Positions 5,463-64,000 of a DNA stretch of 64,000 nucleotides are shown piece after piece. Location of the stretch: NCBI GenBank assembly GCA_044892525.1, contig CM097886.1, positions 84,754,001-84,818,000 of the forward strand, in the 5' to 3' direction. Each line of letters starts with the position of its first letter. Position 1 is the first letter of the stretch. A model generated the notes under the pieces. That model saw nothing but the letters and a program-made list of their open reading frames with translations. It was not told where the DNA came from and did not search any database. The DNA comes from Schmidtea polychroa (Eukaryota). Both the position numbers and the translations under genes were made by a program.

Positions 5463-6567
5463 TTTGATTTTAGATTTTAAAATATTCGTTTATTAAATAT
5501 TAATACTTGATAATTTAAATAAACGGAAATAATTNNNNNNNNNNNNNNNNNNNNNNNNNNNNNNNNNNNNNNNNNNNNNNNNNNNNNNNNNNNNNNNNNN
5601 NNNNNNNNNNNNNNNNNNNNNNNNNNNNNNNNNNNNNNNNNNNNNNNNNNNNNNNNNNNNNNNNNNNNNNNNNNNNNNNNNNNTAACAAATATAAAAGCA
5701 AATAAAATTTTTAAACTAAAAAATTTACCTTTGATGAAATTTTAGACACAATTTTTTTGTTGTCAACTTGCTCTCAGTTTTCGATTTATGCCATTGTGGT
5801 AGGTTTGTTTTGTGTGAAATGATTTTTAAGTTAATAAATTTTTACATTTAATTTAGTTGTTTTTGTTCTTTTTATCATTCATTTCTAGTTTAAATTTTTA
5901 TGTTTTTTGAGTAATTTTAATAGTTATGGTGGAGTGGAACTTACTATTAGCCAAGGATCAGGAGAAATTCTCTGTCTTCAGATCTTGTGGGTTAAAGGCA
6001 GTTTCAAACACCCAGCTGATTTGATTTGTCACGGAGGGCCTTCGTCGAGTTGATCGCTGACATCTTTTTATGGATTATAGTGAGTTAGGCTAGTAATCAA
6101 GAAAGTAAGATCGATTGTAAGTAGAGAAGATTTAGTTTTGGGGTAACATTATAGAAACATCGAGTAACTAGGATTAAATATAGGTCAGAATAAGAAATAT
6201 AGGCAGATCCCTGTTCAAATTTTCCGAAGAATAAGTCGAATATCCTTAAACATTGCAGAAAGTATAGCACAACATTTACGAACAAGAAAATAAGGGCAGA
6301 TCCCTGCGCAAAATTTTCGAAAGTAACATCGACTAACATCCAGCAATGAGGACCACAATAAAATGAATAAATGAATGGCAATAATCTAAGAGATAGATAA
6401 TGAACAGTGACGTAAGACCTTCTATCGGTAGTCCAGAAACTGAGAATGAAAATAAAATGAGGAGTAGTTTTAGCAGTAGAGCTCACCTGCTCATTGATTT
6501 TCAGATATTGTTTACATCACCAACATAATTGTTTCCATGGTTACGCAGATGGTATAAAGTAAAATAG

Positions 6568-6800
6568 TGGTGGGTTACAGGTAAGTATACCTTTTACGTA
6601 TTCGTGCTGTTTCCAGTGTAACCCAGAATACAAACGATTGCTTCTCCGCTTGATACCCGTTGAGCGATCAACGTTGGTACTGAATCAAGAGGGTGAGTGC
6701 TCGCAAAAAATGAGCGCGCTACTTGCACTATAATTGTCGAGCACTCCTTTGGGTTCACGAACTACCGTTAGAAGGTTTATGTCCGCTTTACATGGTCCCT
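6568..6800 (-). ncRNA. Conserved structured RNA motif, copy B
   Basis: Aligns by eye with 46905-47135(+) and 49577-49806(-). Stems are GAGUGCUCG/CGAGCACUC and CGUUGA-UCGC-UCAACG, with the AGUACCAA loop (plus strand 6674-6681) and a CUG-GAAA-CAG hairpin. Confidence 0.7.
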
Positions 6801-6900
6801 GTCGTCAGATAGTGCTCCCGATAACTTGTTAACGTATCTTGTATTCTCCCGCGTACCCCACCATTCGTATCAATCATCATTATTCATGGATCAATCTTTC

Positions 6901-20420: not shown

Positions 20421-21409
20421 CCAAAAATTTTGTGTAATTCACATTTTTACCGAATAATTGATACTAGTAAGAAATGTTTTTGTTTATATGTTTTTATATA
20501 TTATGTTAAATTCAACATTCATATTTGGTTTTTCTTCTTAATGATGTTATTTGGAAGATAACTGAAATCGGAGTGACGATAACATTTTTACGCACCAGTA
20601 GGTAGTTATATGCACTCTAGATCCATGTGCACTCTAGATTCAGATACCCCCCCCTTATTTTTTTTTAAAATTTTTAAAAGACCCCCCCCCCCCATATTTT
20701 TTTTTAAAATTTTTAAAATACCCCCCGCTATATTTTTTTAAATTAAAATTTTTGTTTTAATTATCGACTACGTAACAATTTTATTTTTTGTTTTAATCAT
20801 CGATTACGTAATAATTTAAAAATTTTTAAAATGTCGATTACGTCATTGATTTTAATTTTTTATAAGAATTTTTTATGTCATTATACTTGAAATTTAATTC
20901 TCTGTTAAATGAGACTATGATGTAATCAAAATTCTGAAATTTCATTTTTTTAGTACACGATTTTTAAATTTACACATCTTTTTAAACAAATTGAGATATT
21001 TTCACTCAAACAATATATAGATAGAATTTTAATCTCTATAAAATGACATCAATATTTACTTCAAATTCATAATCATAACACCTTAAACAATGTATTTTTC
21101 AGCCAACTTTTACATACACACATATTTTCAACTTTTAAAAAATACAAATTAATCATCTATACTTAACTCATAGTAAATAATTATATTAAAAGACATATTA
21201 AAAGATGTATTAAAAACTAAACATTTATTAAAATCCCAGAGAAATTCGAGCACTATCTAATTTCCAAATCGGTGATATGACATCTTTCTCATCTATTTTA
21301 TATCCCTGTATTGAAATATTTACGAACCAGCTTTCCCCATCTTTATATTCAATTTTATATAACAAAGACATATTACATAACAAAGACACACCTGACTCAT
21401 CATACTTTT

Positions 21410-22470
21410 TAAATATATTACGTTGCGGTATTTTAAAATTTAAATATATTTTAAAAACTTATTTTGATGCTAAAGTTGACAAAATAAAATTATTGTACAT
21501 ACTTTGCATTATCATATATAGTCTATCAGACAAGATATTTTGTCCCCCTAAGGGTATTGCTCACAAGGGTACTACTCACATGGGTAATTGTCACAAGGGT
21601 ATTACTCACATTCAACATGTCGTAAATTATTTTCAAATACAAGTTCAAAGTATCATTATTTATTTTAACACGCACGGGAGTTATTATTATTATTATCATA
21701 TATAGTCAGAGTTTATCCGACAAGATATTCTGCCCCCCCCACCCCTATGTGTACTGCTTACATAGGTAATGGTTACAAGGGTACTTCTCACATTCAAAAT
21801 GTCTCAAAGGGCATATTATAATTACTATTAAAATTATTATTAAATTCCGACCAACTTATATCAATGAAGGGGTAGAACAAAATATATTACGTTGCGGTAT
21901 TTTAAAATTTAAATATATTTTAAAAACGTATTTTGACACTAAAGTTTACTTAATTAACAAAGACATAATTATTGCACATGCTTTGCATAAATATTATTAT
22001 TATTTTTTGCATTTTTAATATTTTCATTCAAAGTATTATTTCAAANNNNNNNNNNNNNNNNNNNNNNNNNNNNNNNNNNNNNNNNNNNNNNNNNNNNNNN
22101 NNNNNNNNNNNNNNNNNNNNNNNNNNNNNNNNNNNNNNNNNNNNNNNNNNNNNNNNNNNNNNNNNNNNNNNNNNNNTTGCACACACACACACTCAACCCA
22201 TTAAACTTTATTATTATTATTATTAAAATAATTTTTACACACTAGGTTATGGGGTAGAGAATTATTATATGTTTGCAGTATTCTGTATTTGCCTTTACAT
22301 GAAATTTTCAATAAGGAGCGATAATTTTACACATACATTCTATATACACATACCTTGTTTAACATGGGTGTATATACTTCTAGTCTATCCGACAAGATAT
22401 TCTGTCCCCCTATGGGTATTGCTAGCAAGGGTACTACTCACATTCAACATGTCGCAAGGGTATATTAATT
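21410..22470 (+). repeat. Tandem-duplicated termini of the TATCCGACAAGATATT family with 15-bp subterminal repeats
   Basis: The motif occurs at ~21520, ~21710 and ~22380, followed by CAAGGGTACTACTCA-like units. The block ATATATTACGTTGCGGTATTTTAAAATT is duplicated at ~21412 and ~21882. Confidence 0.7.
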
Positions 22471-23819
22471 AGGGTTAGTAAATAAAACTTATGACACATA
22501 CTATTTTTAATAATTCTTTAAACTATAAAAATCAAGACAAGAGAGGACAAGGCAAAGTTTATGCATTTATTATTGCCAGGCCTAATGAGCAGTGACCAAA
22601 TATCTGTGCCTGAAAGACACGGTGGATATTTGTTCGCGTCCACAAGGGTCGTCTGTGCCTCCCCAAGTGGGGTCAGAAGAACCTGGGCATTATAGTTTTC
22701 CGTACGGAACATTACGCCTAGCATGGGTAGTTAACTACCAGCACATTCGAAACGTATAATTTCAAAATGCATGCGTCATTGGCACTATAACCAAATTAAT
22801 TAATGTTTTCACTAACACAAATATATATTTACAGAGGCCTCCCACTAGTTGGATTACAACCGCCTACCACGACGATCAGCTTGTAAATATATATTAATTA
22901 AGGGATAAAGAGGACCCACCCAACCCTATTATATTTAATTTACAAATTTTTCTCGCTCTTCTGCTGGTAATCTATCTCAAAATTATCATCTCCATCGGGC
23001 CATTTGGAATACATTTTGCAAATTGGACGTATTTCTTAGTTTCTGATGCGGTGTCAACTATCATTGCTAAAATTTATATTGATTTAAAAGCAATTAACTT
23101 ACAGATGTTATCTAACATTTTATCGTCACAAATTAAATTCTGTCTGACTATTAGGCAACTGTTATTGGTGGTATACTTTTTCAATGTCATTTCCCACCGT
23201 NNNNNNNNNNNNNNNNNNNNNNNNNNNNNNNNNNNNNNNNNNNNNNNNNNNNNNNNNNNNNNNNNNNNNNNNNNNNNNNNNNNNNNNNNNNNNNNNNNNN
23301 NNNNNNNNNNNNNNNNNNNNNNNNNNNNNTTACATTAATAATAATATTCTTCAGGTATGACGAGTACTTTACTTAATTGCTAAAACATCAATTTTCCCCA
23401 TTTTTCTTGACATTCGTTGAAAGTTTACATAATTTAAGTCTGATAATTCATGTTGAAGGACACCCACAATCAGCTAATTCATTTAAGAAATCCAGAACAT
23501 AAGTCATTTAGTGTTTCACCATTTTGTCTGGTTCATCTTCTTCATAATCATATAATTCATTTTCTTCATTACTAAGTAAAATAATTAAAATATTGTAGTA
23601 AATTCTTTATTTACTTACTTTATGGATACTAAAACGAAAGAAATAAAGTTATATCAAAATTATATTTAAATAATTTAAATTTAAATAATTTAAATTTAGT
23701 ATTTAAACATATTTAAACACTTTAGTTATTTAAGCATATTTAAACATTATTATATAGTATAACTTTATAAAATATTATAATATTATAATTTTATGTATTC
23801 TAAATTTATTAATAAATAT

Positions 23820-23934
23820 AGTTATGTAAAGTTTTGTTTGAATAATATTCGTTTTAATGTGTTTTTGAAAAATATATTTTATTGAATTATTATTGATTTA
23901 TTTTATGAATTTAGAAGTTGAGGACATCATAACT
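23820..23934 (+). repeat. 5' LTR (AGTTATG...CATAACT)
   Basis: Direct repeat of 28270-28384 with a 7-bp perfect terminal inverted repeat. Confidence 0.93.
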
Positions 23935-44384: not shown

Positions 44385-45640
44385 TTATATACAATCATTC
44401 ATACTACTTATATATACTACTCATTAACTTGTATTTCTGATAAAAATTTATAATTTGGGATTTTATAAATTACCCCCATAACCATCTATAATAATATTAG
44501 TGTATACATCATTCATAAAATTTATTTTACAAATTCACCCTATAATGTCCTATTTATAAATATTCGTCTTAATATTACTGAAATATACCATTTGTAAATA
44601 TACACTCCTAAGACATTATAAATTCCAATCACACCCCCATATTTTTTATAACAACTTATACACCTACATGTACATCTATACACTGATATATATACTACTT
44701 ATAAATGAAAATCATAAATTTCATTCTGATGAATCACCCCCCCCCCCTTCATATTCTCCCCTTACCTATACTACTATTTGAATGTATTATGAAAAAGGTA
44801 TAATAAAAATTTCATAAATTGGAGATCTTTGTTTATAATTCTATATATATCTATATCATATTATGTGTATATTACCTATAAATGACAATTTAAAAACAAA
44901 ACCCCTTTATGATATTCTACATTGTTAGAATACAAAAACTATAAATTTCCTAGCTATAATCTTAGTTTATGAATATTTCTCACTTATTATAAATGTCTAT
45001 ATCTCTCACTAAAATAACAGATCAAATCATTAAGAAGATTTATTCATATCACATGGCGAAATAATTTGAGTTTGGATTGAGAATGCGTGGTTTTTCGTTC
45101 ACTGCCTGCGGGGTGGTCGTCTCCACTTTGGGTGGCTTTGGGGAACTACAATGTGAATTGTAAGCACAGGTACTAAAGAAAATGGGCATTACCTTTTTGC
45201 TATTCCTCAGAAGGTCGAATACTCCTTTACTAGGTTTAGAGTTCCGATGTGAGTCGCTCGTGGGTTGGCAGCCGATGGCGTTTCCCGGCTGTGGCTTTCT
45301 TGGATTGCTGGTTCTACAATTTATAAATTGACATTATTGCTTAGTTAAAGTCTATTTTTAATTTAATTAATCAGATTGTTATATAAAATTAGTTTATAAA
45401 TCTTAAATTAATAAAATTTAAAATTGTTATATTTAAATCTCCATTTGAAACATTATAACAAACATAAATTAGAATACGTACATTAGGGAAGTTCCTTTCT
45501 TGAAGAATTATGGGGATATGATGGTGATTAGTATATTCAGTTGAAATTTTTTTTAATCCGACAAAGGTACGGAAACGCATGAGGAGAAACTGGAAAATAA
45601 TCATATTTATCTGAAAAGAAATAGAAAATATTTATTTAGA

Positions 45641-46012
45641 ATGTCGCAGTCCAGTAATCACAGCGAGGAGGACCTGTATGACGTGACGACCACACGCCTT
45701 CGCTCCAGACATATCTGGCACCACATCCACCGGTGGAGCCAGGGACGGGACCTAGATTGCACCAATCGAGTGATCCGGGAAGGCCCCGAGACAAACGCAC
45801 CAGTATGGGTAAAGACCGAGCCGGACAACAATTGGCTCGTCGAGGCCAGAGACCGTACTATGGATGCCATCGCTAGAGCCCAGTGGGAACTCCGTTTGAT
45901 CGAGGCTCAGCTCCGTGCCGTCGAAACTGGTCGGCCAATAGAAGAAGTGGACGTGGAGCCGACGCCGGCGAAGAAACGGGGTCGCCCCCGCAAGAAGGCT
46001 TTCCGAAACTGA
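45641..46012 (+). CDS. Accessory ORF A: 123-aa protein with C-terminal AT-hook
   Basis: GC-rich clean ORF ending PAKKRGRPRKK. The ATG lies one base after an acceptor-like TTTATTTAG. Confidence 0.6.
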   Translation: MSQSSNHSEEDLYDVTTTRLRSRHIWHHIHRWSQGRDLDCTNRVIREGPETNAPVWVKTEPDNNWLVEARDRTMDAIARAQWELRLIEAQLRAVETGRPIEEVDVEPTPAKKRGRPRKKAFRN

Positions 46013-46323
46013 GATCTCGGTGGTCTCGGGGACGGTCTTACATTTCATTCTTTGACTTTAGTGATTTGACATGACCCCTTTGCTTAATAAACGTATTGTT
46101 TTCTTTATTTCGTTATGTCAATCTACATGTTATCATTTTAATAAGTTATGCTAATCGAGACGTTATCATCTAGACTATCAACTCAACAGAAAATTTATGC
46201 TCACCCGTAGGACGTTAGTGTTTTATTCCACTTACATGGGCATAGTTCCTCGGATATGGGTACCCGAGCTTCGTTTCATAGGGATCGGCAATTATAAGGA
46301 GATAAAATTACGGTAAAAGTCGG

Positions 46324-46818
46324 TTGATTCTATATTTTAATTCAGTGTACAAACTGTTCGAAGGACTCCGGAAGGACAGGGAGCAGGCGCAGCAGCAGGC
46401 GGAGCGGCTGCAACTTAGCGTCAATCAGTTCAAGGAACGCTGTCGGAAGATGGAGCAGACTTGGATTCGCCCTGAGGTGGCACACAAGTACTTGAGACAG
46501 ATTGAACAACTGCAGCTCCAGAGTACCCAAGACAAAACCGAAATACGAGCCCTAAAAATACAGATGCGGGCCATGGAAACAAAATTAAATCAGCGGGCCA
46601 TCGACGAGCACGTCACGGCAGCTATCCGGCCCATGACGATAGAACTGGCCGAAATGCACCCAACCAAGCCCAAGGCCAAGCGAAAACGACTAGGCCGGGA
46701 TGGTCGTGAGCGACTCAAACGACTGAGACTAGCAGAGCAAAGATTAGAAGAAGAGGCAAGAAAGTCAGTGCTACTTGACAGTTCATGTGCAGGACCGATG
46801 GATGTAAATAAAACGTAG
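46324..46818 (+). CDS. Accessory ORF B: coiled-coil + basic (NLS-like) protein; 5' end probably spliced at 46345
   Basis: KERCRKMEQTWIRP motif and KAKRKRLGR. It is homologous by eye to 50763-50972(-) and, more weakly, to 58725-59483(+). Confidence 0.62.
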   Translation: MILYFNSVYKLFEGLRKDREQAQQQAERLQLSVNQFKERCRKMEQTWIRPEVAHKYLRQIEQLQLQSTQDKTEIRALKIQMRAMETKLNQRAIDEHVTAAIRPMTIELAEMHPTKPKAKRKRLGRDGRERLKRLRLAEQRLEEEARKSVLLDSSCAGPMDVNKT

Positions 46819-46904
46819 ATAGTTGAAGTCGAGTTCTTGTATGTTGAATGATGAAGCTGAATGATGAGATGGGCATGGCGTTTTTGGGAAAACAATAGAA
46901 GTAG

Positions 46905-47135
46905 GGGACCAATGAAATCGGACACAAATCTTCTACCGATAGTCCGTGGACCCAAAGAGTGCTTGACAATTATAGTGCAAGTAGTGCGCTCACTTTTTGC
47001 GAGTACTCACCCAGTTGACACAGTACCAACGGTGATCGCTCATCGGGTGTCAATTGGCGAAAGCAAGCTTGTATTCTGGGTTACGCTGGAAACAGCACGA
47101 AAGGGTGAAATGTCTGACCACCTGTAACCCACCAA
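46905..47135 (+). ncRNA. Conserved structured RNA motif, copy A
   Basis: Stems are 46957-46965/47000-47008, 47015-47021/47047-47053, 47030-47035/47040-47045 and 47077-47084/47124-47131. The loop AGTACCAA is at 47022-47029 and GCTG-GAAA-CAGC is at 47085-47096. Confidence 0.75.
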
Positions 47136-49576
47136 TAATTTAACATAGTTGTCGAGTCCACAACTCACTGCGATTTTGTAGGTCTATGATCTCACATGCA
47201 GAGTTAAAATGAAGTGGACTCCACTAAAGGTGCTACTGACTTCATGGTTCAGGCCACGGATGTAGTGGGTTAATTATTTCTGAAGTGGCCAACATAGTTT
47301 CGGCTGTGTTGGCTTAAATGAAATCAATAACCTGGTTCGACTTTGTAGTACCTTTTGCTGCAGCGTTGACCGCACATAACACTAAGATCTATCGTAGTGA
47401 GTTCAGTGTGGTCACGAAAATAGGAAAATTTTAATTAATGCGACCATTTTTATCTAATAATAACATATTCAAATCCATGTTAAAATTCTATCATTGTATC
47501 TCACACTAGGACTCAATAAACGGAGGAAAGCTCCAGACTTAATATAATTACAATTCCACAATTAATTAACAAACTATGTAGTCGATTAGTTCTATAATAT
47601 ATGGCAATAATCATGATAAAATTTTCTGTTATAGTTGGTAAAATCGTAGTCGGTACATTTTACTTCAAATAATTATATAGTAACTAGAGACAATGTTTAA
47701 AATTCTAACCAGATTTTTCTATTTATTGTATAGTTTTTCAGTTTGTATAACCAAAGATCATTTTAAAAATATAAATGACCCATAATATATATATTTGATT
47801 TAAAAATATAATTTATAATTTCAATAAATGACCCCCTCAAATCATATAACCGTTAATTATTATCCTAAATGCACTAATAGATTACTATTATGTATATTTG
47901 GCTTATATTTGATTAAAAAGTATAATTTATAATTTTCTTAAAGGACCACCCCCCTAAAATCACAAATTAGCCAAATATCATCTTAGATATACCAACATAA
48001 ATTACCCATGTATTCTATCTATGAGGTAGAATGTATAAACCTTCTTAAACGACCTCTCCCACATTACATGATGATCGAAGGCAATATTATCTCTGACAAT
48101 TCGAATTATGTGTCCATACGTGTATTCACATTGCAAATTTATAAACTCATAAATATCTTGAGGAGCTAGCACATGTAATTCCCAATGACGCGATCGAAAT
48201 CGATCTTTCATTCAAAGTTTGACTACCTAAAATTACAAAATTTATGAAAATCATAAATCCTCCAAATAAGAGGGAAATGTGATGAAAGGTGGGACGTAGC
48301 AAGTGACTGCACCAGCGGGGAAATATAGGGTCCAAAGTGGGAGCCAGTGAGTCGTCGTTGGTGGAGCCTCTCTTGCGACCTACAATTAAAAATATGAATA
48401 TAAATATTGTTGAGGTCCGTAAATTAAAATAAATTTAAATGAAATTTAGGTTAATAATTTAAATAAAAAGTAAGTGAAGAAAAAAGACAAATAAAAGCGG
48501 GATCATACACAGAATCGATAGTAAAAGAAAGTGTGATGGGAGCAGTATTAGAAAATACCAAAAGCAATTACGAAAGGCAAGAATCCGGAAATCCGAGAAA
48601 AATCAATAAATTGAAGAATCATCGAAATCGAATGGGGGAAAACGGGACAGGTATAGAGTAGCTAATGGTCAGCAAGATGATGGTTAGGGATTTATCAGAG
48701 AATGGTTAGGAAGGGTCGAAAAACATTCAAATGTATGAAAACAGAAAACGTTAATTAATTAATTAATTGGCTAATAGAAAACCCGAGCTAATGGGAAACC
48801 CGAGCCAATAGAGAACCCGAGAGATGAAGGAAACCTGAGCTGGGTAAACAAGAAGAAAAGTAAACAGAAGGAAGATTTGGGCCCATTAGTTTGACACAAT
48901 GATTAATTGGAAAAGAGCAAGGAGAAGATAGTGCGTGTAGAAAGGCCAGACTGGCTATTAATTATCTTGGTTCGTTGGACCATTATGGGTGACAGCCGAA
49001 GCAGATACGTGGAAGCAAATGTCAAGTGAAATATTGGCTCGGCAATAATCATTTGTCATCCCGATTTCGAGGAGTATATAAGGAAAGAGAAAATCAGAGC
49101 AAATTGGCATTTTGCCTCAGGTAGGGTAAGAAGAAACCGAGCTTAGGAAAAGGCGAAAACGAATCTAGGAGATTAGGGAAAAAGAAGAGATAGAATAAGA
49201 ATAAAAAGCGTGAAAAGTATCAAATCAAACAGAAAAAGAGGAAAACGTGGGTCAAGAGAACCTAAGAAAATAAAAGGTGAATATTATCTTTATGAAAGAA
49301 TCAACACCGAGCGGAGAATCGGTCAAACGTAGTTTTGATTATTAATTGTAAAGTGGTGAGAAAAGATTGTGAATTTGTTATTTCAATATACGTTGGGTCG
49401 TTATTGTTTTGATTTAAAGGACACGAGGAGTCAGAGGGAACCGACTTAAATTAACCAAAAACCCAACAATATTTAATAAATATTTGGAAAACTAATTACA
49501 TATAAAAACATAATTAGATGATTGAGACAACGGAAATTTTGTAAAAATTATAAACGTACTAAAGGAGTAATACCGT

Positions 49577-49806
49577 TGGTGGGTTACTGATGATTAAATA
49601 TTTATTCTTTAGTGCTGTTACCAGCGCAACCCAAAATAAAACATTGTTTTACCGCTTGATACCCGTTGAGTAATCAACTTTGGTACTGTATCAAGTGGGT
49701 GAGTACTCGCATAAAGTGAGCGCTTTATCGGCACTATAATTTTCGGGTACTCTATGGGTCCACGGACTACCGTTAGAAGACATGTGTCCGATTTACTCAG
49801 GTCCCT
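49577..49806 (-). ncRNA. Conserved structured RNA motif, copy C
   Basis: GAGUACCCG/CGAGUACUC, CUUGAUAC/GUAUCAAG, GUUGA-UUAC-UCAAC, AGUACCAA (plus strand 49680-49687) and GCUG-GUAA-CAGC. Confidence 0.75.
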
Positions 49807-50762
49807 TGCTTTAATTGTTTTCCCAAACACCCTTATACAAATTTACTGTCATCAAACGATCATAAATCACAACAACATGTACATTAATTTATTGAAATCC
49901 GTACATTCAATCACAACTAGGATGCGGAAGTTGATTTGGTGTTTTTGTTAGGTTCGACGGGTATGTATTCGAACTAACACAAAAACAGCCCGATATAGGT
50001 GAGCGGAAAAGAGATAAGGGAGTTTACCTAAATTTAACGCGATAGTCAACCCAGAAATTGGTTAACCCTTTTTCCAATAATATTCGTAACGAAACAACAC
50101 AAAAAAGATACGTGCTGACGTTACTGCTTCCCTTGTTAAAATTAGTTTTATTTAACTGAATAAATTTATATTTATATTTATATTTATTTAGATATGAACA
50201 ATAAAAACTAACTAATTTAATTTTTTCCTTATTGAAATTCCTCCCAGTAGATAGCCAAATCCACAGATGGGTTGTCGAAATGAATCCTAATAATCTTCTT
50301 CCTTTGATCTCTTCTAAATTTCTCCAAAGAATATTGGAGCTAAGTGACAATTTGACTTGATAATAAATTTCCAAGAGATTCTTAAATTCCTTTTCTTCCG
50401 ATCAATAAAATGAATACTAAAACAGAAATTCGTCCAATGAGAAATTTGTTTCCTGATCTAATTTTAATTTTTTCTGATCTGTGATCTTTTTCTCTCTAGA
50501 TTTTCTCCTCCCATCAATATAATTTTGCTGATATTTATATAATTTATTTATTATAAATCTATTAATAGTAATTATTTAATTACTATTTTTATTATAAATT
50601 TTTTAAAAAATTGCTATTTTTGTTACGAATCTATTTTTAGTAATTATTTATTACTATTTATATTTTAATTCCAATTTTAGTAATTTTTAAATACTATTTA
50701 TATTATAATTCTAATTTTAGTAATTAATTATTATTTAATTTCAAAACTTTTGATTCCGGTTC

Positions 50763-50972
50763 CTACTGAACTCCAACATTTTCTAGTCGCTCCTGTTCCG
50801 CCAACCAGGCTCTTTTCAATTTTTCATGAGTGTTTCGCCCTAATTGCTTGCGTTTCGGTTTACTCGACTGTGCACGCGGTTATTTTTCGGCTAGTTCTAT
50901 GGGCATTTGGCGGATCTGAGCTTTGGTAGTTTCATTCATGAACTTCACGTTCAATTTGACCTCAAGCGGTCC
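50763..50972 (-). pseudogene. Fragment of accessory ORF B family (absent from the ORF track)
   Basis: LEVKLNVKFMNETTKAQIRQMPIELAEK*PRAQSSKPKRKQLGRNTHEKLKRAWLAEQERLE aligns with METKLNQRAIDEHVTAAIRPMTIELAEMHPTKPKAKRKRLGRDGRERLKRLRLAEQRLE. Confidence 0.75.
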
Positions 50973-50973
50973 T

Positions 50974-51045
<72 letters not shown>
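50973..51045. repeat. (CT)n(AT)n microsatellite
   Basis: Directly visible in the sequence. Confidence 0.95.
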
Positions 51046-51049
<4 letters not shown>

Positions 51050-51179
51050 TTATATAAATATTGTATTTTAATAAATATTATATTTCTGTATGTTAATGTA
51101 TTTTTTTTAAAATAAGAGGTCGATCTTGAAACCAAAAAGTAGCTCTGGCCATGGAAAAGTTTACCGACCCATTCTATAC

Positions 51180-52430
51180 CAGGGGTCGGTAAACTTTTCT
51201 ATGGCCAGAGCTACTTTTTGGTTTCAAGATCGACCTCTTATTTAAAAAAAAATATTAACATACAGAAATATAATATTTATTAAAACAATTAATGTGATGA
51301 ATGGAATTGGTTTTCATTCAATAGTTTCTTCATATCCGGAGAATAGTTTGTAACTGCCAATCTTAAACAATTATCCAGATTTTTATTGGTAAGTTATGTT
51401 CGATATTTATACTTTATGAATTTCATATTTGAAAATACGGATTGACACAAGTACGTTGATCCAAAGAGTCAAAATATTTTTAATGCAACATCTCTTAAAA
51501 ACGAATACTCATTCGGTGTTACATGGCTCCAAAATTCCAATTGATTTTCAGAAAATTCGCAACTCAACTCTATATCATTTGGTATTGAAATTAATTCCAT
51601 TTTTAGCTGTGCTTTATCATATTGGTTATTAATAACTTCCAAGAGAGTTTCGATATTAATATTTACGAAAGGATACATAAAAAATTTCACAATTGGTTCG
51701 ATGTTGCGAAAATTTGCGAAGCGTTTTTCAAACTCTTCTAATAAACTAATAACAATTGGTCAACAACTTTCACAGAAAATGAGTTAAACTATTAATCTCT
51801 TCTTTTAAATTAGTAAAGTGTTTCAAATCATATTCTATTAGGTTGATTTCCCACATGATTAATTTTTGGTTAAAACATTGCACCGCACTTATCAAATGCA
51901 TTATATTTTTATCTTTCCATTGCAGATATGCATTTAATTCATTTAATCTCACCGTAATATCAGTAAGAAACGCTAGATCTCTAAGCCATGAATCATTGCT
52001 TAGCTCCTGATGACTTCCTTTCAAAAATAAACTTATTCGTGGTAACAATTCTCTAAAACGCTTTAAATATTTTCCCTTACTTAGCCAATGAACTTCTGTA
52101 TGTAATAACAGATCACCATATTGACAATCGAGCTCGCCGTTAAGTCCTTTAAATAAACGTCTTTGCAGTGATTTTCCTCTTAAAGAATAACTAATTTTGA
52201 CTACAAGTTTCATAACAGAATTCATGTTCAAAAATTTAGCACAAAGGGCTTGCTGATGTATTATACAGTGATAACTTATGAATTCAGGATATCTTTGATC
52301 TTTTTTTACATAATGCAATAAAAATGCAATAGGGAAAACTAAATTAGAAGTTAGTCTTTTCTCTGAGTCCGGTATGACAGTAGGCATGGTTGGTTTTGCA
52401 GGGATTTACGATGCTGGAATAGCAACGACC
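51180..52430 (-). mobile_element. 5'-truncated, decayed hAT (Charlie-like) element
   Basis: TIR CAGGGGTCGGTAAACTTTT at 51180. Fragments include YHCIIHQQALC, EVHWLSKG, DLAFLTDI and FGSTYLCQSVFS, with stops and frameshifts. Confidence 0.85.
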
Positions 52431-54850: not shown

Positions 54851-55463
54851 CCAGTGGCGTAGTGAGCATAATTAACGCCCAGGCAGCATGCCATTTTCGC
54901 GCCTCCGAAAGAATGCAGAAATATCTAAAAGAATCTTTCTGTAATTGATCCTATCACACGCTCTATTTTTACACAACCATTGTTTATCAAACCATTTAAC
55001 GTGTCCAATAACTTGAGATTGAGCCATGATTGAATTGGAAATATTGGATAATTGTTCAACACTTTGGCGAATAAACATTTGAATTTAGTTGATCTTTTTA
55101 AGAGCGCGATTAAATAGAATATCATATTCATAAGTTAGCAAGTTTATCTTTTTATCGCTAATGTCATAAATGATTTCAGATAATTCACGAATATCTTTAA
55201 ATCTTTGGGGAAATTTCTTAAAAATATCTTGGAGTTCCTCTTCTGTCATTTCATGATTTACAGAGATTAAATCGTTGATTTCCAATCGTTTTGATAAACC
55301 TCCATTAATCATTTGCAACGACCTTGTTGAGCCACGATCACATGGACAAGTTTCACTGCTGGAAAGACATGTCTTCGCGCAACAGATACAAAACGCATGT
55401 CTACAACTTTCAAATATTAACGCCCAGGCAGCATGCCATCTTCGCGCCTCCGAAAGAATACAG

Positions 55464-55470
<7 letters not shown>
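54851..55470 (-). pseudogene. RING-finger gene fragment flanked by ~55-bp direct repeats of a hAT-MITE-like end
   Basis: ESCRHAFCICCAKTC....CPCDR is the second half of a RING. ORFs 55085-55660 and 54872-55078 are in frame across one stop. The repeat TTAACGCCCAGGCAGCATGCCAT.TTCGCGCCTCCGAAAGAAT occurs at ~54872 and ~55416, and CAGTGGCGTAG is at ~54852. Confidence 0.5.

Positions 55471-55548
<78 letters not shown>
55466..55548. repeat. (TA)n microsatellite
   Basis: Directly visible in the sequence. Confidence 0.97.
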
Positions 55549-55554
<6 letters not shown>

Positions 55555-55845
55555 GATATTTTTTTCCAATTTCAACACTAATTATTTTTTCCATTGAATT
55601 AACTAAAAAGAGAGCTTGAAGAATATAAATCAGTAATGTATAGATGTTTTTGATACTCACGAATTTTCGGCACTGCCTTTTTCAAGTGAATTTTAAAAAG
55701 CAAATTTTGTAACAATTAAAATAAATATTTAATTTAACATGAAATACAAAAACAAGCTAAATTAGCTTATAAAACGTTTATTCAATTATATAAGTAAGAA
55801 ACTTTAAAACATATGCTGAGCGAAACTAGTATCTGTTGGGCTAAA

Positions 55846-58724: not shown

Positions 58725-59483
58725 ATGAATACCTCGACCAGCTCTGGAAAAATTCCTCGTCCTTGTTTCTCCTGCGCCGATAAAAATGCAGATATCGCGC
58801 AGCTCCATCTATACATCGGGGCTCTAAAGAAGAGAATTGACCTCTATGAGGGTACGTGGTTCTCCCCGCCACGAATGAAGGAGGAACGAAAGAAAATCCT
58901 CCGGTTAGAACATTGTAGAGATAGCTTGCTGGAGGAAAGCCGATGCCAACGGCTTACAATCAAAGCCCAATCGGAAGCCCTCCACAAGGTATACACGGAG
59001 GCAGAACTGGCCAAGCGGGTTCGGGAATTCCCCGTCTTAGATAGCTCTAACATTTTCCCACTGCATCATCAGACGTCTCAAGTAACTACATCGAACTGTC
59101 AAGGGCATGGCTCTTATCTGCCGCCCATTCCAGCCCCGGTATTATCTGGATGTCAGCCGCTGGCAGGTGGCTCTTCCGACCCAATTTTGGCTCCAGTGTT
59201 GTTGGCACCCTCCGCCGCATCTATCGCGAATAACCAGATGTCTTCCCGCAAAAGGAAACGGCCAACCCGGGCCGCCAAGAATCAGAAACGTCGAGATGCG
59301 ATGGCAGCACTGGAGGCTTCGTTATCCGTGGCCCAGTCCACCATCGAAGAGATTTCGAGCTCGCATGTGATTCCAGCCAGAGAAATATTTCGAGTAGTGC
59401 CGGCCGACGGTATTAAGTACCTCGCAGATCGTCGCTTACCTGTGGACATTGATGAGGTGTTCGCAGACAGTGAAGCATTTTGA
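58725..59483 (+). CDS. Accessory ORF B-like protein, 252 aa (CxxC, coiled coil, Pro/Ser-rich linker, basic RKRKR)
   Basis: The ATG directly follows CTCTTAATCTTTAG. LKKRIDLYEGTWFSP parallels FKERCRKMEQTWIRP of 46324-46818. Confidence 0.65.
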   Translation: MNTSTSSGKIPRPCFSCADKNADIAQLHLYIGALKKRIDLYEGTWFSPPRMKEERKKILRLEHCRDSLLEESRCQRLTIKAQSEALHKVYTEAELAKRVREFPVLDSSNIFPLHHQTSQVTTSNCQGHGSYLPPIPAPVLSGCQPLAGGSSDPILAPVLLAPSAASIANNQMSSRKRKRPTRAAKNQKRRDAMAALEASLSVAQSTIEEISSSHVIPAREIFRVVPADGIKYLADRRLPVDIDEVFADSEAF

Positions 59484-59783
59484 TGGAGCTGGAGCAGCAG
59501 CGGGACGTGTCCGTCCGATTTGACATGCGTATTGACCGACTCTCTTGTATATGGCGAACACTTGTTTTATTCTTTTGTTTTTGTGCTTCAGACTTTGATG
59601 AAAGAAGTTTGATTATTTGTAATTTAATGCGTGTAATTTAATTTAATATAAGTATGGACATTTAATGAGTTATTTTACGAGAATGATGAGGGAAACGCCC
59701 GATTTGATTGATGAACCGAATGGATGACATTGAAGGAAGGTTGTCCCCTCGGACCAGGGTCGACCCGAGAATGAATGAGATTA

Positions 59784-59925
59784 TGGGTAAGTCCTTCTAA
59801 GGCACCTTAGAACCTGTACCGCGAGTGGGTTAAGAGTAGTCCTAAGGCAGGGGCTCACCTGTTAACCTACTCCAACCCGTGTGAGCAGCACCAACGTGGA
59901 ACACCGCCACGGGCTCACATGAGGG
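59784..59925 (+). ncRNA. Conserved structured RNA motif, divergent copy D
   Basis: Same topology with different stem sequences: GAGUAG/CUACUC and UGUGAGC-AGCACCAA-CGUGG(7)CCACG-G-GCUCACA (59880-59919), with an upstream CUUCUA..UAG hairpin. Confidence 0.68.
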
Positions 59926-60463
59926 AATATTAATAAGGTCATGTGATGTATGTTGGGTAAATCTGAGACCGATGTATGGGATTGCATGTCCGACTACGAA
60001 AATATTTCTTCTCCCCTTCATACACCAACATGATTTTTGGGGGTTCAGCCGGGATCTGATTTCGAATTGTTTGATTGCCTATTATTGTATTACGATGTGT
60101 TAGACTAACAATTTAATTAATTATAATAAAAAAGGGAATCGGGACGGAAATGAATCGATATTATAGTGTATTAAGATGATGATACGAACTGTTTTTGCGT
60201 GAAATAGAACATGCTATGAACAAAAACGAACCTAAATAAGTTTGAATGAATGTGATTGAATATGAAGAGAAGAGAAAATGGGAATTGACTAATTTTGTTT
60301 AATTTTAAATGAATTAAATTAAAAAAGAATTATTAAAGATTGAATAAAATACATAAACTAGAAACAATAGCGAACAAAGCCAAACGAACATTGATTATAA
60401 CACGATAATATTATTTTTATTTTTATAAGTGAGACCGAGTAATGACAACATACTTTTTTAGAT

Positions 60464-60943
60464 ATGTCAGAAGCTAGGAAACATCTACAACGACTAAGCC
60501 GGTTCGTCGACATAGAAAACGATTCCATAAAGACGTTAAGAGAAAAACTGCAACAAATAGAAACCCTAGAGCAACAACGCCACAACGCACCGCTGATATC
60601 CAAACAAAACTTTCTAACCGACAGATTGGGGTCAACAAATACCGACACCGACTTGTCTGTCCATTACCAATGGATGCAGCAACGACTCGACGACCCCGCT
60701 CTGAACCTCGAATATGTGAGAATACGCGAACAAGTAAAAACTCTGTCTCAGAGAATACGAACCTCGATAATAGAAAAAGCAGCGGCCTTGAGAACTTGTA
60801 ACATTTGTAAGACGCGACCTGCCAGAATTCTAATTCTACCTTGTGGACACCTTAGCCATTGCGACGAATGCGCCGTCAGTTTAACGCATTGCTCTTTATG
60901 TGTATGTGCAATAAAGGAGAAGCACACGATTTACTTCAGTTAA
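60464..60943 (+). CDS. Coiled-coil + C-terminal IAP/MDM2-type RING (C3HC4) protein, putative E3 ligase
   Basis: CNICKTRPARILILPCGHLSHCDECAVSLTHCSLCVCAIKEKHTIYFS ends the protein. No BIR domain is present. The ATG lies 2 nt after TACTTTTTTAG. Confidence 0.8.
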   Translation: MSEARKHLQRLSRFVDIENDSIKTLREKLQQIETLEQQRHNAPLISKQNFLTDRLGSTNTDTDLSVHYQWMQQRLDDPALNLEYVRIREQVKTLSQRIRTSIIEKAAALRTCNICKTRPARILILPCGHLSHCDECAVSLTHCSLCVCAIKEKHTIYFS

Positions 60944-61524
60944 CACGCGAGCAGCACTCGGTGAAAGAATTGATCTGATTGACGATTTGACTAAATCCTT
61001 TATTTTTAATTGATGTATCAACAATTTTCTAGTAAATTTGTATATTGCATGTGACTTAAGCCAACTAATGAATAGAATGTTTTGCGTGTTCATTTTATTG
61101 TGAATTCAGTAACTTATTGATAATTTTCACCATAGAGAGAGAGCATCTATAAATTTAATTTGAACAAATAAATAAAGTGGAGCTAGTCCCAACATAGGAT
61201 TAAAGGGGGAATAAACCGAGCCACCTTCGGGAGGTACGATACACGAAAACCGGTTGGGAAGGGATAACCGATCACCCCGAGTAAGAGATGTAAGGCGAGG
61301 TACCATCGCGAATATTGAAAAGTTTCTGCGGTATGGCTGATCACCATACCAATGTAGAAATGGATCAATGCGATCGTTTTGCGTTTTGAGCAAGGGGGGA
61401 AAGGGGAAACATTCTCAAGCGGCACAGATTAGATCGACAAATAAAAAGTAAAAATAAAAGGAAAGATCACAGTCTAGAATAAAGGTAAAGAAAAGATAGA
61501 AGCATGCAGAGTCGAAGATATTGA

Positions 61525-62017
61525 GGCCGAGCTGTTGAATAGTCCAGCCGGCCAGGGAAATTGAAACTGAGCTGTGAAAAGTCCAGCCAGTCAGGAGATA
61601 TTAAGGCCGAGTTGTTGAATAGTCCAACCGGTCAGAAGGAAGAAGATTGAGCTGTTGAAAAGTGCCAGCCAGTCGTAAGGCCGAGCTGTCGAGAAGTCCA
61701 GCCGGTCAGGAAAAATTAAAAACTGAGCTGTGAAAAGTCCAGCCAGTTCGGAGACGAAGAAGATTGAGCTGTTGAAAAGTGCCAGCCAGTCGTAAGATCG
61801 AGTTGTCGAATAGTCCAACCGGTCAGAAGGAAGAAGATTGAGCTGTTGAAAAGTGCCAGCCAGTCGTAAGATCGAGTTGTCGAATAGTCCAACCGGTCAG
61901 AAGGAAGAAGATTGAGCTGTTGAATAGTGCCAGCCAGTCGTAAGATCGAGTTGTTGAATAGTCCAACCGGTCAGAAGGAAGAAGATTGAGCTGTTGAAAA
62001 GTGCCAGCCAGTCGTAA
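61525..62017 (+). repeat. 74-bp tandem repeat array built from two ~37-bp subunits, upstream of gag
   Basis: GAGCTGTTGAA recurs at 61766, 61840, 61914 and 61988 (period 74). Earlier units are more diverged. Confidence 0.92.
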
Positions 62018-62964
62018 AGGCCTAGAAAATGATTGGATAGGATTTAAGTTGATAATGAGATAGAATATTAAGCTAGCTAGAAACGAATTGAATTGGGATA
62101 CGAGAAGTCGAATTTAGAAAGGATTAAACGAGCTCGTAGAAGATGAAAACAAAACCATTTTAGTAGAAAAGGAGAATCGGACAAGGAAAATGAATTGAGG
62201 AGATAGTAAAGGTAGAGGATAAGTGGGAATAAATGACGAGTAAAAAGGAAGATAATTAATTAATTAAAGGGGATCCCAAGTAAGTAGACAAAAGTCTACA
62301 GAATTTTTGGTTTAAACCGGATAAACGAATCTGATTTTTTTTGGTTCAGAGTAGAACCGAGTAAAGGGGAACAGAGACGAAAGATTAAGTAAAATAGCGG
62401 AACCGCGTAAAAGGATTAAGAGAATATGGGGGGTGATAAGCAGTAACTGACAACGACCTATCGTTATTATAAATGGGAACTATAGATAATTGATACGACC
62501 ATATAGATAATTATTACTACCCCAAATAGATAATTTAAAATCGACGAAAACTATGGGTTGATGGGTAACTATAATCCACGAGGAATTATATGGGGAATAA
62601 AGAGAAGCATAACAGAGGCCCTAAACGGTGTCTGTGTTTGAATGTTGCAGAAAGAATGATGAAGTCGTGTAAGCAGATGCAACACGAGATCATTTTTTCA
62701 TTTTAGATATCAAACCAATCCAGTCAATCAAGCCAATCCAGAACCTGCACAAAGGAATTCGAAGAAATCAACGACCAACTAGAAATAACCAATCCAGAAC
62801 CCGCTCAGTAGGAGTAACACAACCCGAAGATTCCAAGAACGGAAGACGTCTCATAACGCTAACAACCAATTGCCAAGGACTCGGAACACCGACAAAACCG
62901 AATTCGCTCAAGTCAGCAGCCGCTAATTGCCGAGAAATCCATAAGAGACGATAAGGAGGCGTAA

Positions 62965-64000
62965 GAAGAAATCACGGAGAAACTAAATCTCAGATCCTCA
63001 AGTAAGTCAAGAGACGTATTATTTTCAGGAGACGAACTAGAACAGCTCAGAAGAGGACGATCCATAAAACAGCAAAGAGGAAGATCACAAGGAGCAAAAA
63101 GAACAAATCAAGTACCAACATTTGACCAAGAAAACCTCGGATACACCCCTAGTCGATCTAGAAGCAGAGAAAGCCTATCCGATATAACAAACAACCTAAC
63201 CGGGTCAACAGAAGAATTAGCCGTCTATAATTTAGCGACATCGCTGGAAAATTTAAAAGAAACAATAGAGTTACAAGAACCAGTCATGATGAATGTGGTA
63301 AAAACCGACGAGTATAAAGAAAAATTTAGAGGCGAACCGTTTAACGGGAATGCGAACAAGTTGGCAACGTTCATAACAAATTTTGAAGTCTATATCGATG
63401 TGTGCGGATGGACAGCGGAAGCAATTAGTAAACGAATGCCTCTGTTTTTGTGCGATAGCGCACTCGAAGTGTATCTAGAAGCAAAAGAAAGAAATACGAA
63501 ATTAGACAATTGGGAAAGCATCAAAACATTTTTGAGAAAAACATTCGGGGCCAGCAAACCAATAAATCAAGCCCTAGGAGAATTAGCGAGTAGAAAACAA
63601 AGAGCAAATGAATCAATAACGTTATACGCAAGCGAATTGCGAAGATTGGCAAAGAAGGCCATGAACGGAAACTTGCCGGAGGAGAATCTAATTGGTTATT
63701 TCATAGAAGGATTACGCCGGGAAGAGGTAAGAGCCTCGGTGGGATGTCAGATGTGTAAAACACTAGAAGAGGCCATAGATTGGGCCACAAGATGCGAACT
63801 ACACCTCCCGGCACAAATGAATATCATGCAGGAGGAGGGAAGAATCGCAGCAGCTACGGTGAAAACAGAAAATGGAGATAACAACAATCATGAACCCAAG
63901 ATGAATCAGTTCATACCAGGTGCGCACCAAATTTTCAAACCACCGCAAGGACGATCAAACGGGAATAACAGTGAACGCAACAACTCGAACAATGGAAATA
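62965..64000 (+). CDS. gag: Ty3/gypsy-type Gag, runs off the window (ATG at 63286; not in the ORF track)
   Basis: The frame is open from 62965: FRGEPFNGNANKLATFITNFE..CGW..WESIKTFLRKTFG..LASRKQRANESITLYASELRRLAKKA..LIGYFIEGL, a retrotransposon gag pattern. Confidence 0.88.

What the first reader, a model, noticed from the sequence alone, without database searches (positions are those of the whole stretch)
46905..47135. Novel ~200-nt structured RNA with compensatory base changes, present in four copies
Seen: copies A (46905-47135,+), B (6568-6800,-), C (49577-49806,-) and D (59784-59925,+). P2 pairs are GAGUGCUUG/CGAGUACUC (A), GAGUGCUCG/CGAGCACUC (B) and GAGUACCCG/CGAGUACUC (C). P3 pairs are UUGACAC/GUGUCAA (A) and UUGAUAC/GUAUCAA (C). 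The inner hairpin is CGGUGA/UCAUCG (A) and CGUUGA/UCAACG (B). A GNRA hairpin switches GAAA to GUAA, and the asymmetric loop AG(U/C)ACCAA opposite a single G is invariant. Substitutions are mostly non-synonymous in the overlapping small ORFs and copy B has a 1-nt indel, so the constraint is not protein-coding. It matches no ribozyme or Rfam family I can recognise. Inference: it is a cis-acting RNA of a retroelement family (export, packaging, translation, stability or self-cleavage).
Basis: partly seen in the sequence, partly recalled or inferred. Interest (0 to 1): 0.88.

Follow-up and report, generated by a model that had tools for sequence, protein, structure and literature searches.

The report
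New structured RNA in mobile elements
A roughly 155-base, three-hairpin non-coding RNA fold, absent from Rfam, recurs in this AT-rich animal genome next to a transposon-type coiled-coil/basic ORF, and is most likely a cis-acting signal in a retroelement transcript rather than a gene product or chance repeat.

Summary
A (46880-47135 +), B (6567-6825 -) and C (49576-49830 -) are real 256-nt repeats, 78-82% identical. They show no coding constraint and match no Rfam family. D (59767-59925 +) is invisible to a sequence profile, but a covariance model built only from A/B/C finds it at 36 bits (E about 2e-7). D shares helices P1-P3, with 19 of 45 pairs changed on both sides and still paired. Stems vary half as often as loops (p = 3e-4). 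The RNA is 80% identical between A and C, while the neighbouring ORF remnant is 56% identical.

The context is new. A, C and D each lie downstream of a co-oriented coiled-coil/basic ORF. That ORF's only database relatives are chimeric gene models fused to unrelated host domains, which points to a mobile element. D sits between this ORF and an IAP-type RING ORF, 3 kb upstream of a Ty3/gypsy gag. This layout recalls the giant planarian 'Burro' elements.

Best reading: a new cis-acting RNA module of a retroelement family, probably a protein-recognition platform for packaging or export. The mechanism is inferred. No more copies could be fetched, because the genome is not in the reachable collections. 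Self-cleavage, IRES and tRNA identity have no support.

The parts
46880..47135 (+). Copy A, full 256-nt unit: 24-nt leader, P1-P3 core (46904-47059), linker, P4 domain (47077-47131), 3' end ...ACCCACCA
   Evidence: Self-BLAST, extended alignment, fold with z = -3.35, helix coordinates
46905..46953 (+). A: P1 three-tier hairpin (46905-11/46947-53, 46919-23/46942-46, 46928-30/46938-40); the apical loop contains CUUCUA, shared with D
46957..47008 (+). A: P2 (9 bp, 46957-65/47000-08) enclosing hairpin P2b (46974-78/46986-90); the GCUCAC segment is shared with D
47011..47057 (+). A: P3 (47011-21/47047-57) with internal loop CAGUACCAA, a 2-bp P3b and an apical hairpin P3c (47031-35/47040-44)
47077..47135 (+). 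A: P4 domain. An 8-bp closing stem (47077-84/47124-31) is followed by ACCA. It holds a GNRA-capped hairpin (47085-88/47093-96) and a variable hairpin. Present only in A, B and C
   Evidence: It is not a tRNA
6567..6825 (-). Copy B, full unit (core 6644-6800). No upstream ORF remnant was detected
49576..49830 (-). Copy C, full unit (core 49650-49805)
59767..59925 (+). D: divergent structural homologue of the P1-P3 core. P2 and P3 are built from different letters and the loop motifs are kept. No P4
   Evidence: Model R1 gives 36.2 bits, E about 1.6e-7, the best non-self hit in the window. Its own MFE shows the same P2/P3. Pair counts
58725..59483 (+). Intact 252-aa ORF, 284 nt upstream of D: helical hairpin/coiled coil, disordered linker, basic helix. 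Strong member of an orphan family seen elsewhere only inside chimeric gene models
   Evidence: (E = 9e-28 against a family HMM built without it)
46306..46818 (+). Open 170-codon stretch ending 62 nt upstream of A. Weak, collinear similarity to the same ORF family
   Evidence: BLASTP E = 0.01 in two collinear segments, hhalign E = 0.003, second-best of 1,836 six-frame pieces against the family HMM
50766..50990 (-). Broken remnant (at least one interruption) of the same ORF as A's, lying upstream of C on C's strand
   Evidence: tblastn: 53% identity over 62 aa, E = 1e-9
60464..60943 (+). Context of D: 159-aa ORF with a coiled coil and a C-terminal IAP-type RING (zf-C3HC4_3)
61516..62025 (+). Context of D: tandem repeats with a unit of about 74 nt
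62965..63999 (+). Context of D: Ty3/gypsy gag ORF (Retrotrans_gag, Ty3_capsid) running off the end of the window

Best explanation
A, B, C and D belong to a so far undescribed family of structured non-coding RNA modules carried by a family of mobile elements, most likely gypsy-type retroelements with accessory ORFs, in an AT-rich animal genome. The conserved unit is a three-hairpin core (P1-P3, about 155 nt). Its stems co-vary and its loop motifs are fixed. It is transcribed on the strand of, and just downstream of, an element-encoded coiled-coil/basic protein.

The proposed mechanism is that the folded core acts in cis on the element's transcript as a recognition platform for a protein. The best candidate is the adjacent coiled-coil/basic ORF product, or otherwise Gag. 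This would mark the transcript for ribonucleoprotein assembly, meaning packaging or nuclear export of the unspliced RNA. The A/B/C lineage adds a 3' domain (P4) that ends in an acceptor-like stem plus ACCA.

Shown: the repeats, the fold, the covariation, the lack of coding constraint, the absence from Rfam, and the linkage to the ORF.

Inferred: the retroelement class, the protein partner and the function.
For: Fold under selection.
- 96% of cells are paired in A/B/C, with more double-sided changes than in shuffles.
- Stems vary at 26 of 127 columns and loops at 51 of 121, Fisher p = 3e-4.
- A model built from A/B/C alone retrieves D at 36 bits, against a background of 15 bits or less in 128 kb searched.
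- Relative to A, D has 19 of 45 pairs changed on both sides and still paired, and its own MFE gives the same P2/P3.
- The sense strand is unusually stable in all four copies.

Not coding.

RNA better conserved than its neighbours: A and C are 80% identical in the RNA and 56% in the ORF remnant.

Mobile-element link.
- The ORF upstream of D is a strong member of a family whose other 14 members are all chimeras with unrelated host domains, from a single UniParc batch.
- A's and C's upstream ORFs are homologous to each other, and A's is weakly similar to that family.
- D lies between this ORF and a RING ORF, followed by tandem repeats and a Ty3 gag on one purine-rich strand. That layout matches published accounts of planarian Burro elements: accessory ORFs upstream of gag, RING/BIR motifs and tandem repeats (PMC6431247), in genomes above 70% A/T (PMC11410931).

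Precedent: accessory proteins needed to export genomic RNA exist in invertebrate Ty3/gypsy elements (Cer1 CERV, PMC10309623).
Against: - Only four sequences from a single window were available. The alignment that includes D is fitted to the model.
- There is no RT, gag or pol remnant beside A, B or C, and no ORF remnant upstream of B.
- The similarity between A's ORF and the family is not significant on its own (E = 0.29 to 0.003).
- The LTR bounds around D are unknown, so D may lie outside the gypsy element.
- The ORF family has no recognised RNA-binding domain. The only hint is a sub-threshold Pfam REV hit on a relative's Arg-rich tract, and fold search gives only generic coiled coils.
- The antisense strand of C folds about as well as its sense strand.
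- Binding, packaging and export are all untested.
Confidence: 0.5

Rival explanations
1. A, B and C are short, self-contained retroposed units, or the shared 3' ends of 5'-truncated non-LTR-type copies. The structured RNA, ending in an acceptor-like stem plus CCA, would be the 3'-terminal site that a reverse transcriptase recognises or primes from. D would be a related module in another element.
For: - All three copies end at exactly the same base...ACCCACCA, with no similarity beyond it.
- B stands alone, with no ORF remnant.
- There are three copies in 64 kb at 78-82% identity, as in a dispersed repeat family.
- P4 has an 8-bp closing stem followed by ACCA.
Against: - There are no target-site duplications and no poly(A) or simple-repeat tail.
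- There is no Pol III-derived head and no tRNA/5S/7SL match.
- There is no RT or endonuclease ORF nearby.
- The common 5' edge may be only the limit of constraint, because homology between A and C continues upstream at the protein level.
- Stems are more conserved than loops, which is not expected from neutral decay after insertion alone.
- P4 is missing in D.
Confidence: 0.2
2. The units are genes or pseudogenes of a host small non-coding RNA, independently transcribed, that happens to lie near transposon debris.
For: - The fold is compact, discrete and strand-biased.
- Stems are conserved more than loops.
- There is no match to known families, so it could be a lineage-specific RNA.
- A UGAUGA word lies within 60 nt upstream of each of A, B and C. 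Its significance was not tested.
Against: - Copies of a functional small RNA gene within one genome are usually near-identical, whereas these differ by about 20%.
- There is no shared upstream promoter-like sequence and no shared T-run terminator.
- The repeated, co-oriented linkage to the transposon-type ORF in A, C and D has no explanation under this model.
Confidence: 0.12
3. The repeat is neutral. The apparent structure and compensatory changes come from chance, shared ancestry, or deriving the structure from the same sequences.
For: There are only three close copies. The consensus structure was derived from them, and the shuffle controls ignore relatedness (caveats given).
Against: - D was found by a model that had never seen it, at 36 bits against a background of 15 or less.
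- D keeps 19 pairs through double changes.
- Single-sequence MFEs of A and D agree on P2/P3.
- Slid-partner controls fall to 31-40% paired.
- Stems are significantly less variable than loops.
Confidence: 0.05
4. The constraint acts on DNA, for example terminal inverted repeats of a DNA transposon (A and C face each other 2.4 kb apart), a short LTR, or a protein-binding array.
For: A (+) and C (-) form an inverted pair. The unit starts near TGG and ends in CCA. hAT-like copies lie nearby.
Against: - No flanking duplications exist around 46880-49830 or around single units.
- Homology between A and C continues outward past the supposed termini.
- B and D are solitary.
- Covarying stems with G.U pairs and the strand bias in A, B and D point to RNA.
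- The hAT copies are equally distant from each other, at 36-42% amino-acid identity.
Confidence: 0.03

Closest known systems
Retroviral and LTR-retroelement cis-acting RNA signals in the genomic transcript (packaging signals in the leader; Rev-response-type and constitutive-transport-type export elements)
   Same: A multi-hairpin non-coding module of about 150-250 nt, with conserved loops and co-varying stems. It sits on the sense strand of a retroelement-like locus, and in D it lies upstream of gag. A basic protein is encoded next to it.
   Different: There is no sequence or Rfam match to any of them. Its position inside an LTR element is not proven. No binding or export data exist. The A/B/C copies have no gag or pol nearby.
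Cer1 CERV system of C. elegans (PMC10309623)
   Same: An invertebrate Ty3/gypsy element with an orphan, fast-evolving accessory protein. That protein has a helical or leucine-zipper region and is required for export of the unspliced genomic RNA.
   Different: CERV is a 517-aa product of a five-exon mRNA that overlaps gag, has a Cys-rich domain, and has no defined RNA target. The ORF here is 252 aa, unspliced as far as can be seen, has no Cys-rich domain and lies upstream of gag. No homology was detected.
Giant gypsy-like Burro elements of planarians (Grohme et al. 2018, as summarised in PMC6431247)
   Same: [quoted passage not shown]
   Different: The host species, the LTRs and the size of the element cannot be checked in this window. 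No structured RNA module is mentioned in the summary of Burro that I read (PMC6431247); the primary paper was not available.
Conserved 3'-UTR stem-loops of stringent-type non-LTR elements and their SINE partners
   Same: A short dispersed unit with a fixed 3' end and a structured terminal domain.
   Different: It has no RT partner, tail, target-site duplication or Pol III head.
tRNA-like 3' structures ending in CCA (established general knowledge)
   Same: P4 closes with an 8-bp stem followed by ACCA at the end of the unit.
   Different: It has no cloverleaf. ARAGORN and the Rfam tRNA model find nothing, and permissive calls are inconsistent and on the wrong strand. P4 is absent from D.

Membership tests
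Any Rfam 15 family (including ribozymes, IRES elements, snRNA/snoRNA, RNase P/MRP, 7SK, 7SL) | Score at or above the family's gathering threshold | tested here: not met
   The whole window at gathering thresholds gives only a weak tRNA hit at 41698-41770. In E <= 10 mode on A/C, D and B, only noise far below threshold appears.
Protein-coding exon | Substitutions enriched at third codon positions or synonymous; a frame kept across copies; protein homologues | tested here: not met
   Substitutions fall 29/31/27 by codon position, non-synonymous changes dominate in all frames, B carries indels, and there are no homologues.
tRNA or tRNA-like structure (P4) | Cloverleaf recognised by tRNA models | tested here: not met
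   ARAGORN finds 0 genes and Rfam tRNA gives no hit at E <= 10. Permissive mitochondrial-mode calls are inconsistent and antisense.
tRNA or tRNA-like structure (P4) | Acceptor-type stem followed by NCCA at the 3' end | tested here: met
   An 8-bp stem (47077-84/47124-31) followed by ACCA is invariant in A, B and C.
SINE | Head derived from a Pol III RNA (tRNA, 5S or 7SL) | tested here: not met
   No such Rfam match at E <= 10.
SINE or non-LTR retroposed copy | Target-site duplications and an A-rich or simple-repeat tail | tested here: not met
   The longest shared flank words are 6-7 nt and out of register, and there is no tail.
Non-LTR retrotransposon 3' UTR | An RT/endonuclease ORF upstream in longer copies | tested here: not met
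   Pfam scans of flanking pieces and tblastn with the window's pol find nothing near A, B or C.
LTR-retroelement cis RNA (leader, packaging or export signal) | Location inside an LTR element on the sense strand | tested here: inconclusive
   D is co-oriented with a Ty3 gag ORF and lies 3.0 kb upstream of it, in one purine-rich block. LTR and PBS bounds could not be found, and the 3' LTR lies outside the window.
Rev/RRE-type pair | An element-encoded basic RNA-binding protein encoded with the structured target | tested here: inconclusive
   A coiled-coil/basic ORF is adjacent in A, C and D. The Pfam REV hit in relative P0004 is below threshold, at 19.1 against a cut-off of 22 bits.
Rev/RRE-type pair | Specific binding, multimerisation on the RNA, and export dependence | not testable with these tools
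   These need experimental data.
Burro-like giant gypsy element | gag with Retrotrans_gag; accessory ORFs upstream; RING/BIR-type motifs; tandem repeats | tested here: met
   compared with the description in PMC6431247.
Burro-like giant gypsy element | Internal region up to about 25 kb with long LTRs; planarian host | not testable with these tools
   The window ends 1 kb into gag, and the genome is not in the reachable collections.
DNA transposon TIR or short LTR | Paired termini with flanking duplications | tested here: not met
   Homology between A and C continues beyond the supposed termini.

The most novel reading that the evidence does not exclude
Giant gypsy-like retroelements of an AT-rich invertebrate (possibly a planarian) carry a dedicated protein-RNA pair upstream of gag. 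An orphan coiled-coil/arginine-rich protein multimerises on the P1-P3 fold to export or package the unspliced genomic RNA, as an independent invention of the Rev/RRE or CERV logic. Short derivative units (A, B, C) keep only the RNA, capped by an acceptor-like ...ACCA 3' domain, and ride on that machinery.
Probability: 0.15. Interest if true: 0.75.

Novelty: new member of a known kind. Interest (0 to 1): 0.55.

Why it matters
Structured cis-acting RNAs are well characterised for vertebrate retroviruses, but hardly at all for invertebrate LTR elements. How giant retroelements with many accessory ORFs handle export and packaging of very long unspliced RNAs is an open question. This module has clear covariation between two divergent lineages and a physically linked orphan basic protein. 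That gives a concrete, searchable handle (a covariance model) for annotating such elements. It would also help to clean up chimeric gene models that have swallowed the linked ORF, and to ask by sequence, structure and expression data whether a Rev/RRE-like logic arose independently outside retroviruses.

Tried and rejected
Searches for more copies or for the source genome, all without result:
- An IUPAC pattern scan of metagenome contigs gave 17 loci, all chance matches by nhmmer.
- The same pattern in viral contigs gave nothing.
- Exact-protein look-ups of four window ORFs and two family members were not on record. One further look-up was not sent because of a queue.
- A protein search with the overlapping 88-aa ORF found no homologue.
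- A search with the LIM exon was wasted, because my E-value cut-off was too strict.
- Scans for loci encoding the ORF family found nothing in viral contigs.

Readings I rejected:
- Coding exon.
- tRNA or SINE head.
- LTR, TIR or PBS readings of the unit ends.
- A hAT-borne module: the hAT-like copies are mutually 36-42% identical and differently arranged around B.
- P4 in D.
- An informative fold for the ORF: only generic coiled coils.

- These were fragments of RNase P/MRP RNAs, Pol III box and snoRNA box consensus strings, a hammerhead core and a group II intron domain V fragment, simple-repeat LINE tails, and the arginine-rich motif of a retroviral Rev protein.
- They are fragments, not a sequence, but they are consensus-like, so I flag them.

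Full report
**1. What is there**

The window is AT-rich (about 30% G+C). It is animal nuclear DNA: it holds a proteasome beta-7-type exon and an FHL/testin-type LIM exon, and it is crowded with mobile elements.

Self-BLAST shows three units of about 256 nt that are 78-82% identical. These are A (46880-47135, +), B (6567-6825, -) and C (49576-49830, -). An extended alignment puts a sharp common 3' edge at ...ACCCACCA. A sequence profile of A/B/C finds nothing else in the window, and it does not find D.

**2. Not coding**

Substitutions among A, B and C fall 29/31/27 on the three codon positions of the overlapping ORF. Non-synonymous differences outnumber synonymous ones about four- or five-fold in all six frames, and B carries indels. 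The 88-aa ORF has no homologue in 5.8 billion proteins.

**3. The fold**

Copy A folds into four domains on the + strand (MFE -76 kcal/mol, z = -3.35). The opposite strand is unremarkable (z = -1.1).

RNAalifold on A/B/C gives 64 pairs. Of the cells, 96% are paired. Seven pairs changed on both sides, against 3.1 +/- 1.2 in shuffles, and slid-partner controls drop to 31-37% paired. Paired columns vary at 26 of 127 and unpaired columns at 51 of 121 (Fisher p = 3e-4).

**4. D is the key test**

MAFFT aligns D badly. However, a covariance model of P1-P3 built only from A/B/C, run unfiltered over both strands of the window, returns D (59767-59925, +) at 36.2 bits, E about 1.6e-7. The next hits are at 15 bits or less and are antisense or adjacent to the training copies.

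Relative to A, D keeps 17 pairs unchanged, 2 through one-sided changes and 19 through double changes; 5 are unpaired. For all four sequences together, 21 of 45 pairs have double-sided changes, 95% of cells are paired, and 0 of 500 shuffles reach this (this alignment is model-fitted).

Independently, D's own MFE gives a long P2 and a P3 with the same asymmetric loop and inner hairpin (z = -2.5 to -3.2). The 3' domain P4 is not detectable in D. The shared module is therefore P1-P3, and P4 is a feature of the A/B/C lineage.

**5. Known RNA families**

Rfam 15 gives no match at gathering thresholds, nor at E <= 10 around A/C, D or B. That excludes recognisable ribozymes, IRES elements, snRNAs, snoRNAs and RNase P/MRP. 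ARAGORN finds no tRNA. P4 looks like an acceptor stem plus ACCA, but it is not a cloverleaf.

**6. Context**

- **A.** It starts 62 nt after an open 170-codon coiled-coil/basic stretch (46306-46818).
- **C.** It has a broken remnant of the same ORF upstream on its own strand (53% identity over 62 aa).
- **D.** It starts 284 nt after an intact 252-aa ORF (58725-59483).

An exhaustive HMMER search with the 252-aa ORF found 10 relatives, and a profile search found 4 more. All are singletons from one UniParc accession range. In most of them the conserved 120-200-residue domain is fused to an unrelated host domain, such as a transporter, CRAL-TRIO, subtilase, actin, a phosphatase or ankyrin. This is what a dispersed mobile-element ORF looks like after gene predictors absorb it.

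A family HMM built without the window sequence scores D's ORF at E = 9e-28. The second-best of 1,836 six-frame pieces is A's upstream ORF (E = 0.29, two collinear segments). BLASTP (E = 0.01) and hhalign (E = 0.003) agree on the same register. So the link is strong for D, weak but positionally specific for A, and reaches C through A. Nothing is seen upstream of B.

The predicted protein is a helical hairpin/coiled coil, a disordered linker and a basic helix, and it has no informative structural neighbour.

**7. What kind of element**

Downstream of D, on one purine-rich strand, lie:
- a 159-aa coiled-coil ORF with an IAP-type RING;
- tandem repeats with a 74-nt unit;
- a Ty3/gypsy gag ORF running off the window.

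Published summaries describe giant gypsy-like Burro elements of planarians with accessory ORFs upstream of gag, RING/BIR/apoptosis-related motifs and tandem repeats (PMC6431247). Planarian genomes are more than 70% A/T (PMC11410931). The resemblance is suggestive, but the host species and the LTR bounds could not be checked.

Beside A, B and C there is no gag, pol or RING remnant. The nearby hAT-like copies are old (36-42% amino-acid identity to each other) and differently arranged around B, so I treat them as bystanders.

**8. Selection versus decay**

Between A and C the RNA unit is 80% identical, while the ORF remnant is 56% and the spacer about 54%. After insertion, all parts should decay alike. 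The excess conservation of the RNA and the sparing of stems therefore mean that much of the divergence arose in lineages where the fold mattered. It also means the 'sharp edges' of the unit may mark the limits of constraint rather than the ends of a mobile unit.

**9. Mechanism**

I take the P1-P3 fold to be a cis-acting recognition platform in the element's transcript. The adjacent basic coiled-coil protein, or Gag, is the likely reader, and the role would be packaging or export of the unspliced RNA. Cer1 CERV shows that invertebrate gypsy elements can need such an accessory export protein (PMC10309623).

My confidence by step is about 0.85 that the fold is real and selected, about 0.75 that it belongs to a mobile element, and about 0.35 for this particular mechanism. 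The main rival, at 0.2, is a 3'-terminal reverse-transcriptase recognition or priming domain of short retroposed units. The invariant ...ACCA end and solitary B favour it. The lack of flanking duplications, a tail, a Pol III head and a partner RT argue against it. A host small-RNA gene family, a neutral repeat and a DNA-level signal are less likely. Section 1 of the rival explanations gives the evidence for each.

**10. Limits**

The evidence rests on four sequences from one window. No further copies could be retrieved, because the genome is not in the collections the tools reach. The E-value of the model hit is rough. The organism is inferred.

**11. Slips**

One notebook entry and my working commentary summarise conserved residues of the ORF family as short motif strings. 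I flag both, and nothing was deleted.

Noticed in passing
window 31183-39147 (-): A run of ORFs typical of a Maverick/Polinton-type element: double-jelly-roll capsid (37855-38529), rve integrase (36306-36992), a parvovirus-VP1-like phospholipase A2 domain (36999-37826) and an adenovirus-pX-like basic protein (34899-35627).
   Followed up: partly
window about 22372-29005 (+): A second, ordinary-sized Ty3/gypsy element with open gag (23893-25152, CCHC knuckle) and pol (25179-28259: PR-RT-RNase H-IN). It is flanked by LTR-like direct repeats (23820-23934/28270-28384 at 98%; 22372-22474/28903-29005 at 92%). Two N runs lie in its 5' repeat region and were left untouched. It carries no copy of the RNA module.
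   Followed up: partly
window 1280-2793 (+), 39984-41351 (+), 43102-44178 (+), 51292-52405 (-): Four hAT-type transposase-like copies (DUF4371 plus the hAT dimerisation domain), mutually about 36-42% identical. One has a 455-aa open frame. The copy at 43 kb has one in-frame stop, and the copies at 1 kb and 52 kb have at least one and at least two interruptions respectively.
   Followed up: partly
window 41698-41770 (+): A tRNA-like sequence (Rfam tRNA, 32 bits) followed directly by a long T run. Standard ARAGORN does not call it. It may be a tRNA pseudogene or the head of a tRNA-derived repeat, and it is unrelated to P4.
   Followed up: partly
within 60 nt upstream of A (46830-46879), B (6826-6885, -) and C (49831-49890, -): Each copy has a UGAUGA word shortly upstream of the unit, and A has two. 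It resembles a box-C-like word, but its significance was not tested and no matching 3' box was sought.
   Followed up: no
window 7700-8475 versus 9275-10180, and 20144-20439: A diverged inverted duplication next to copy B, with a related segment at 20.1-20.4 kb. This is another unclassified repeat family.
   Followed up: no
window 59926-60060 (+): Directly after D's P3, the MFE predicts a long, roughly 100-nt hairpin whose 3' strand contains CACCAAC, loosely echoing the ...CACCA end of A, B and C. The P4 model does not recognise it.
   Followed up: partly
window 45557-46009 (+): A 151-codon open stretch upstream of A's coiled-coil ORF, ending in an AT-hook-like basic tract (sub-threshold Pfam hit). 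It may be part of the same element as A.
   Followed up: no
proteins P0001-P0014 (UniParc, one accession range): All database relatives of the D-linked ORF are gene models that fuse it, in most cases, to unrelated host domains. This suggests systematic mis-annotation in some published invertebrate genome.
   Followed up: partly
window 50950-51110 and 55400-55560: Long (TA)n and (TATC/TC)-type microsatellites. The (TA)n tracts create spurious ORFs rich in Tyr-Ile repeats.
   Followed up: no
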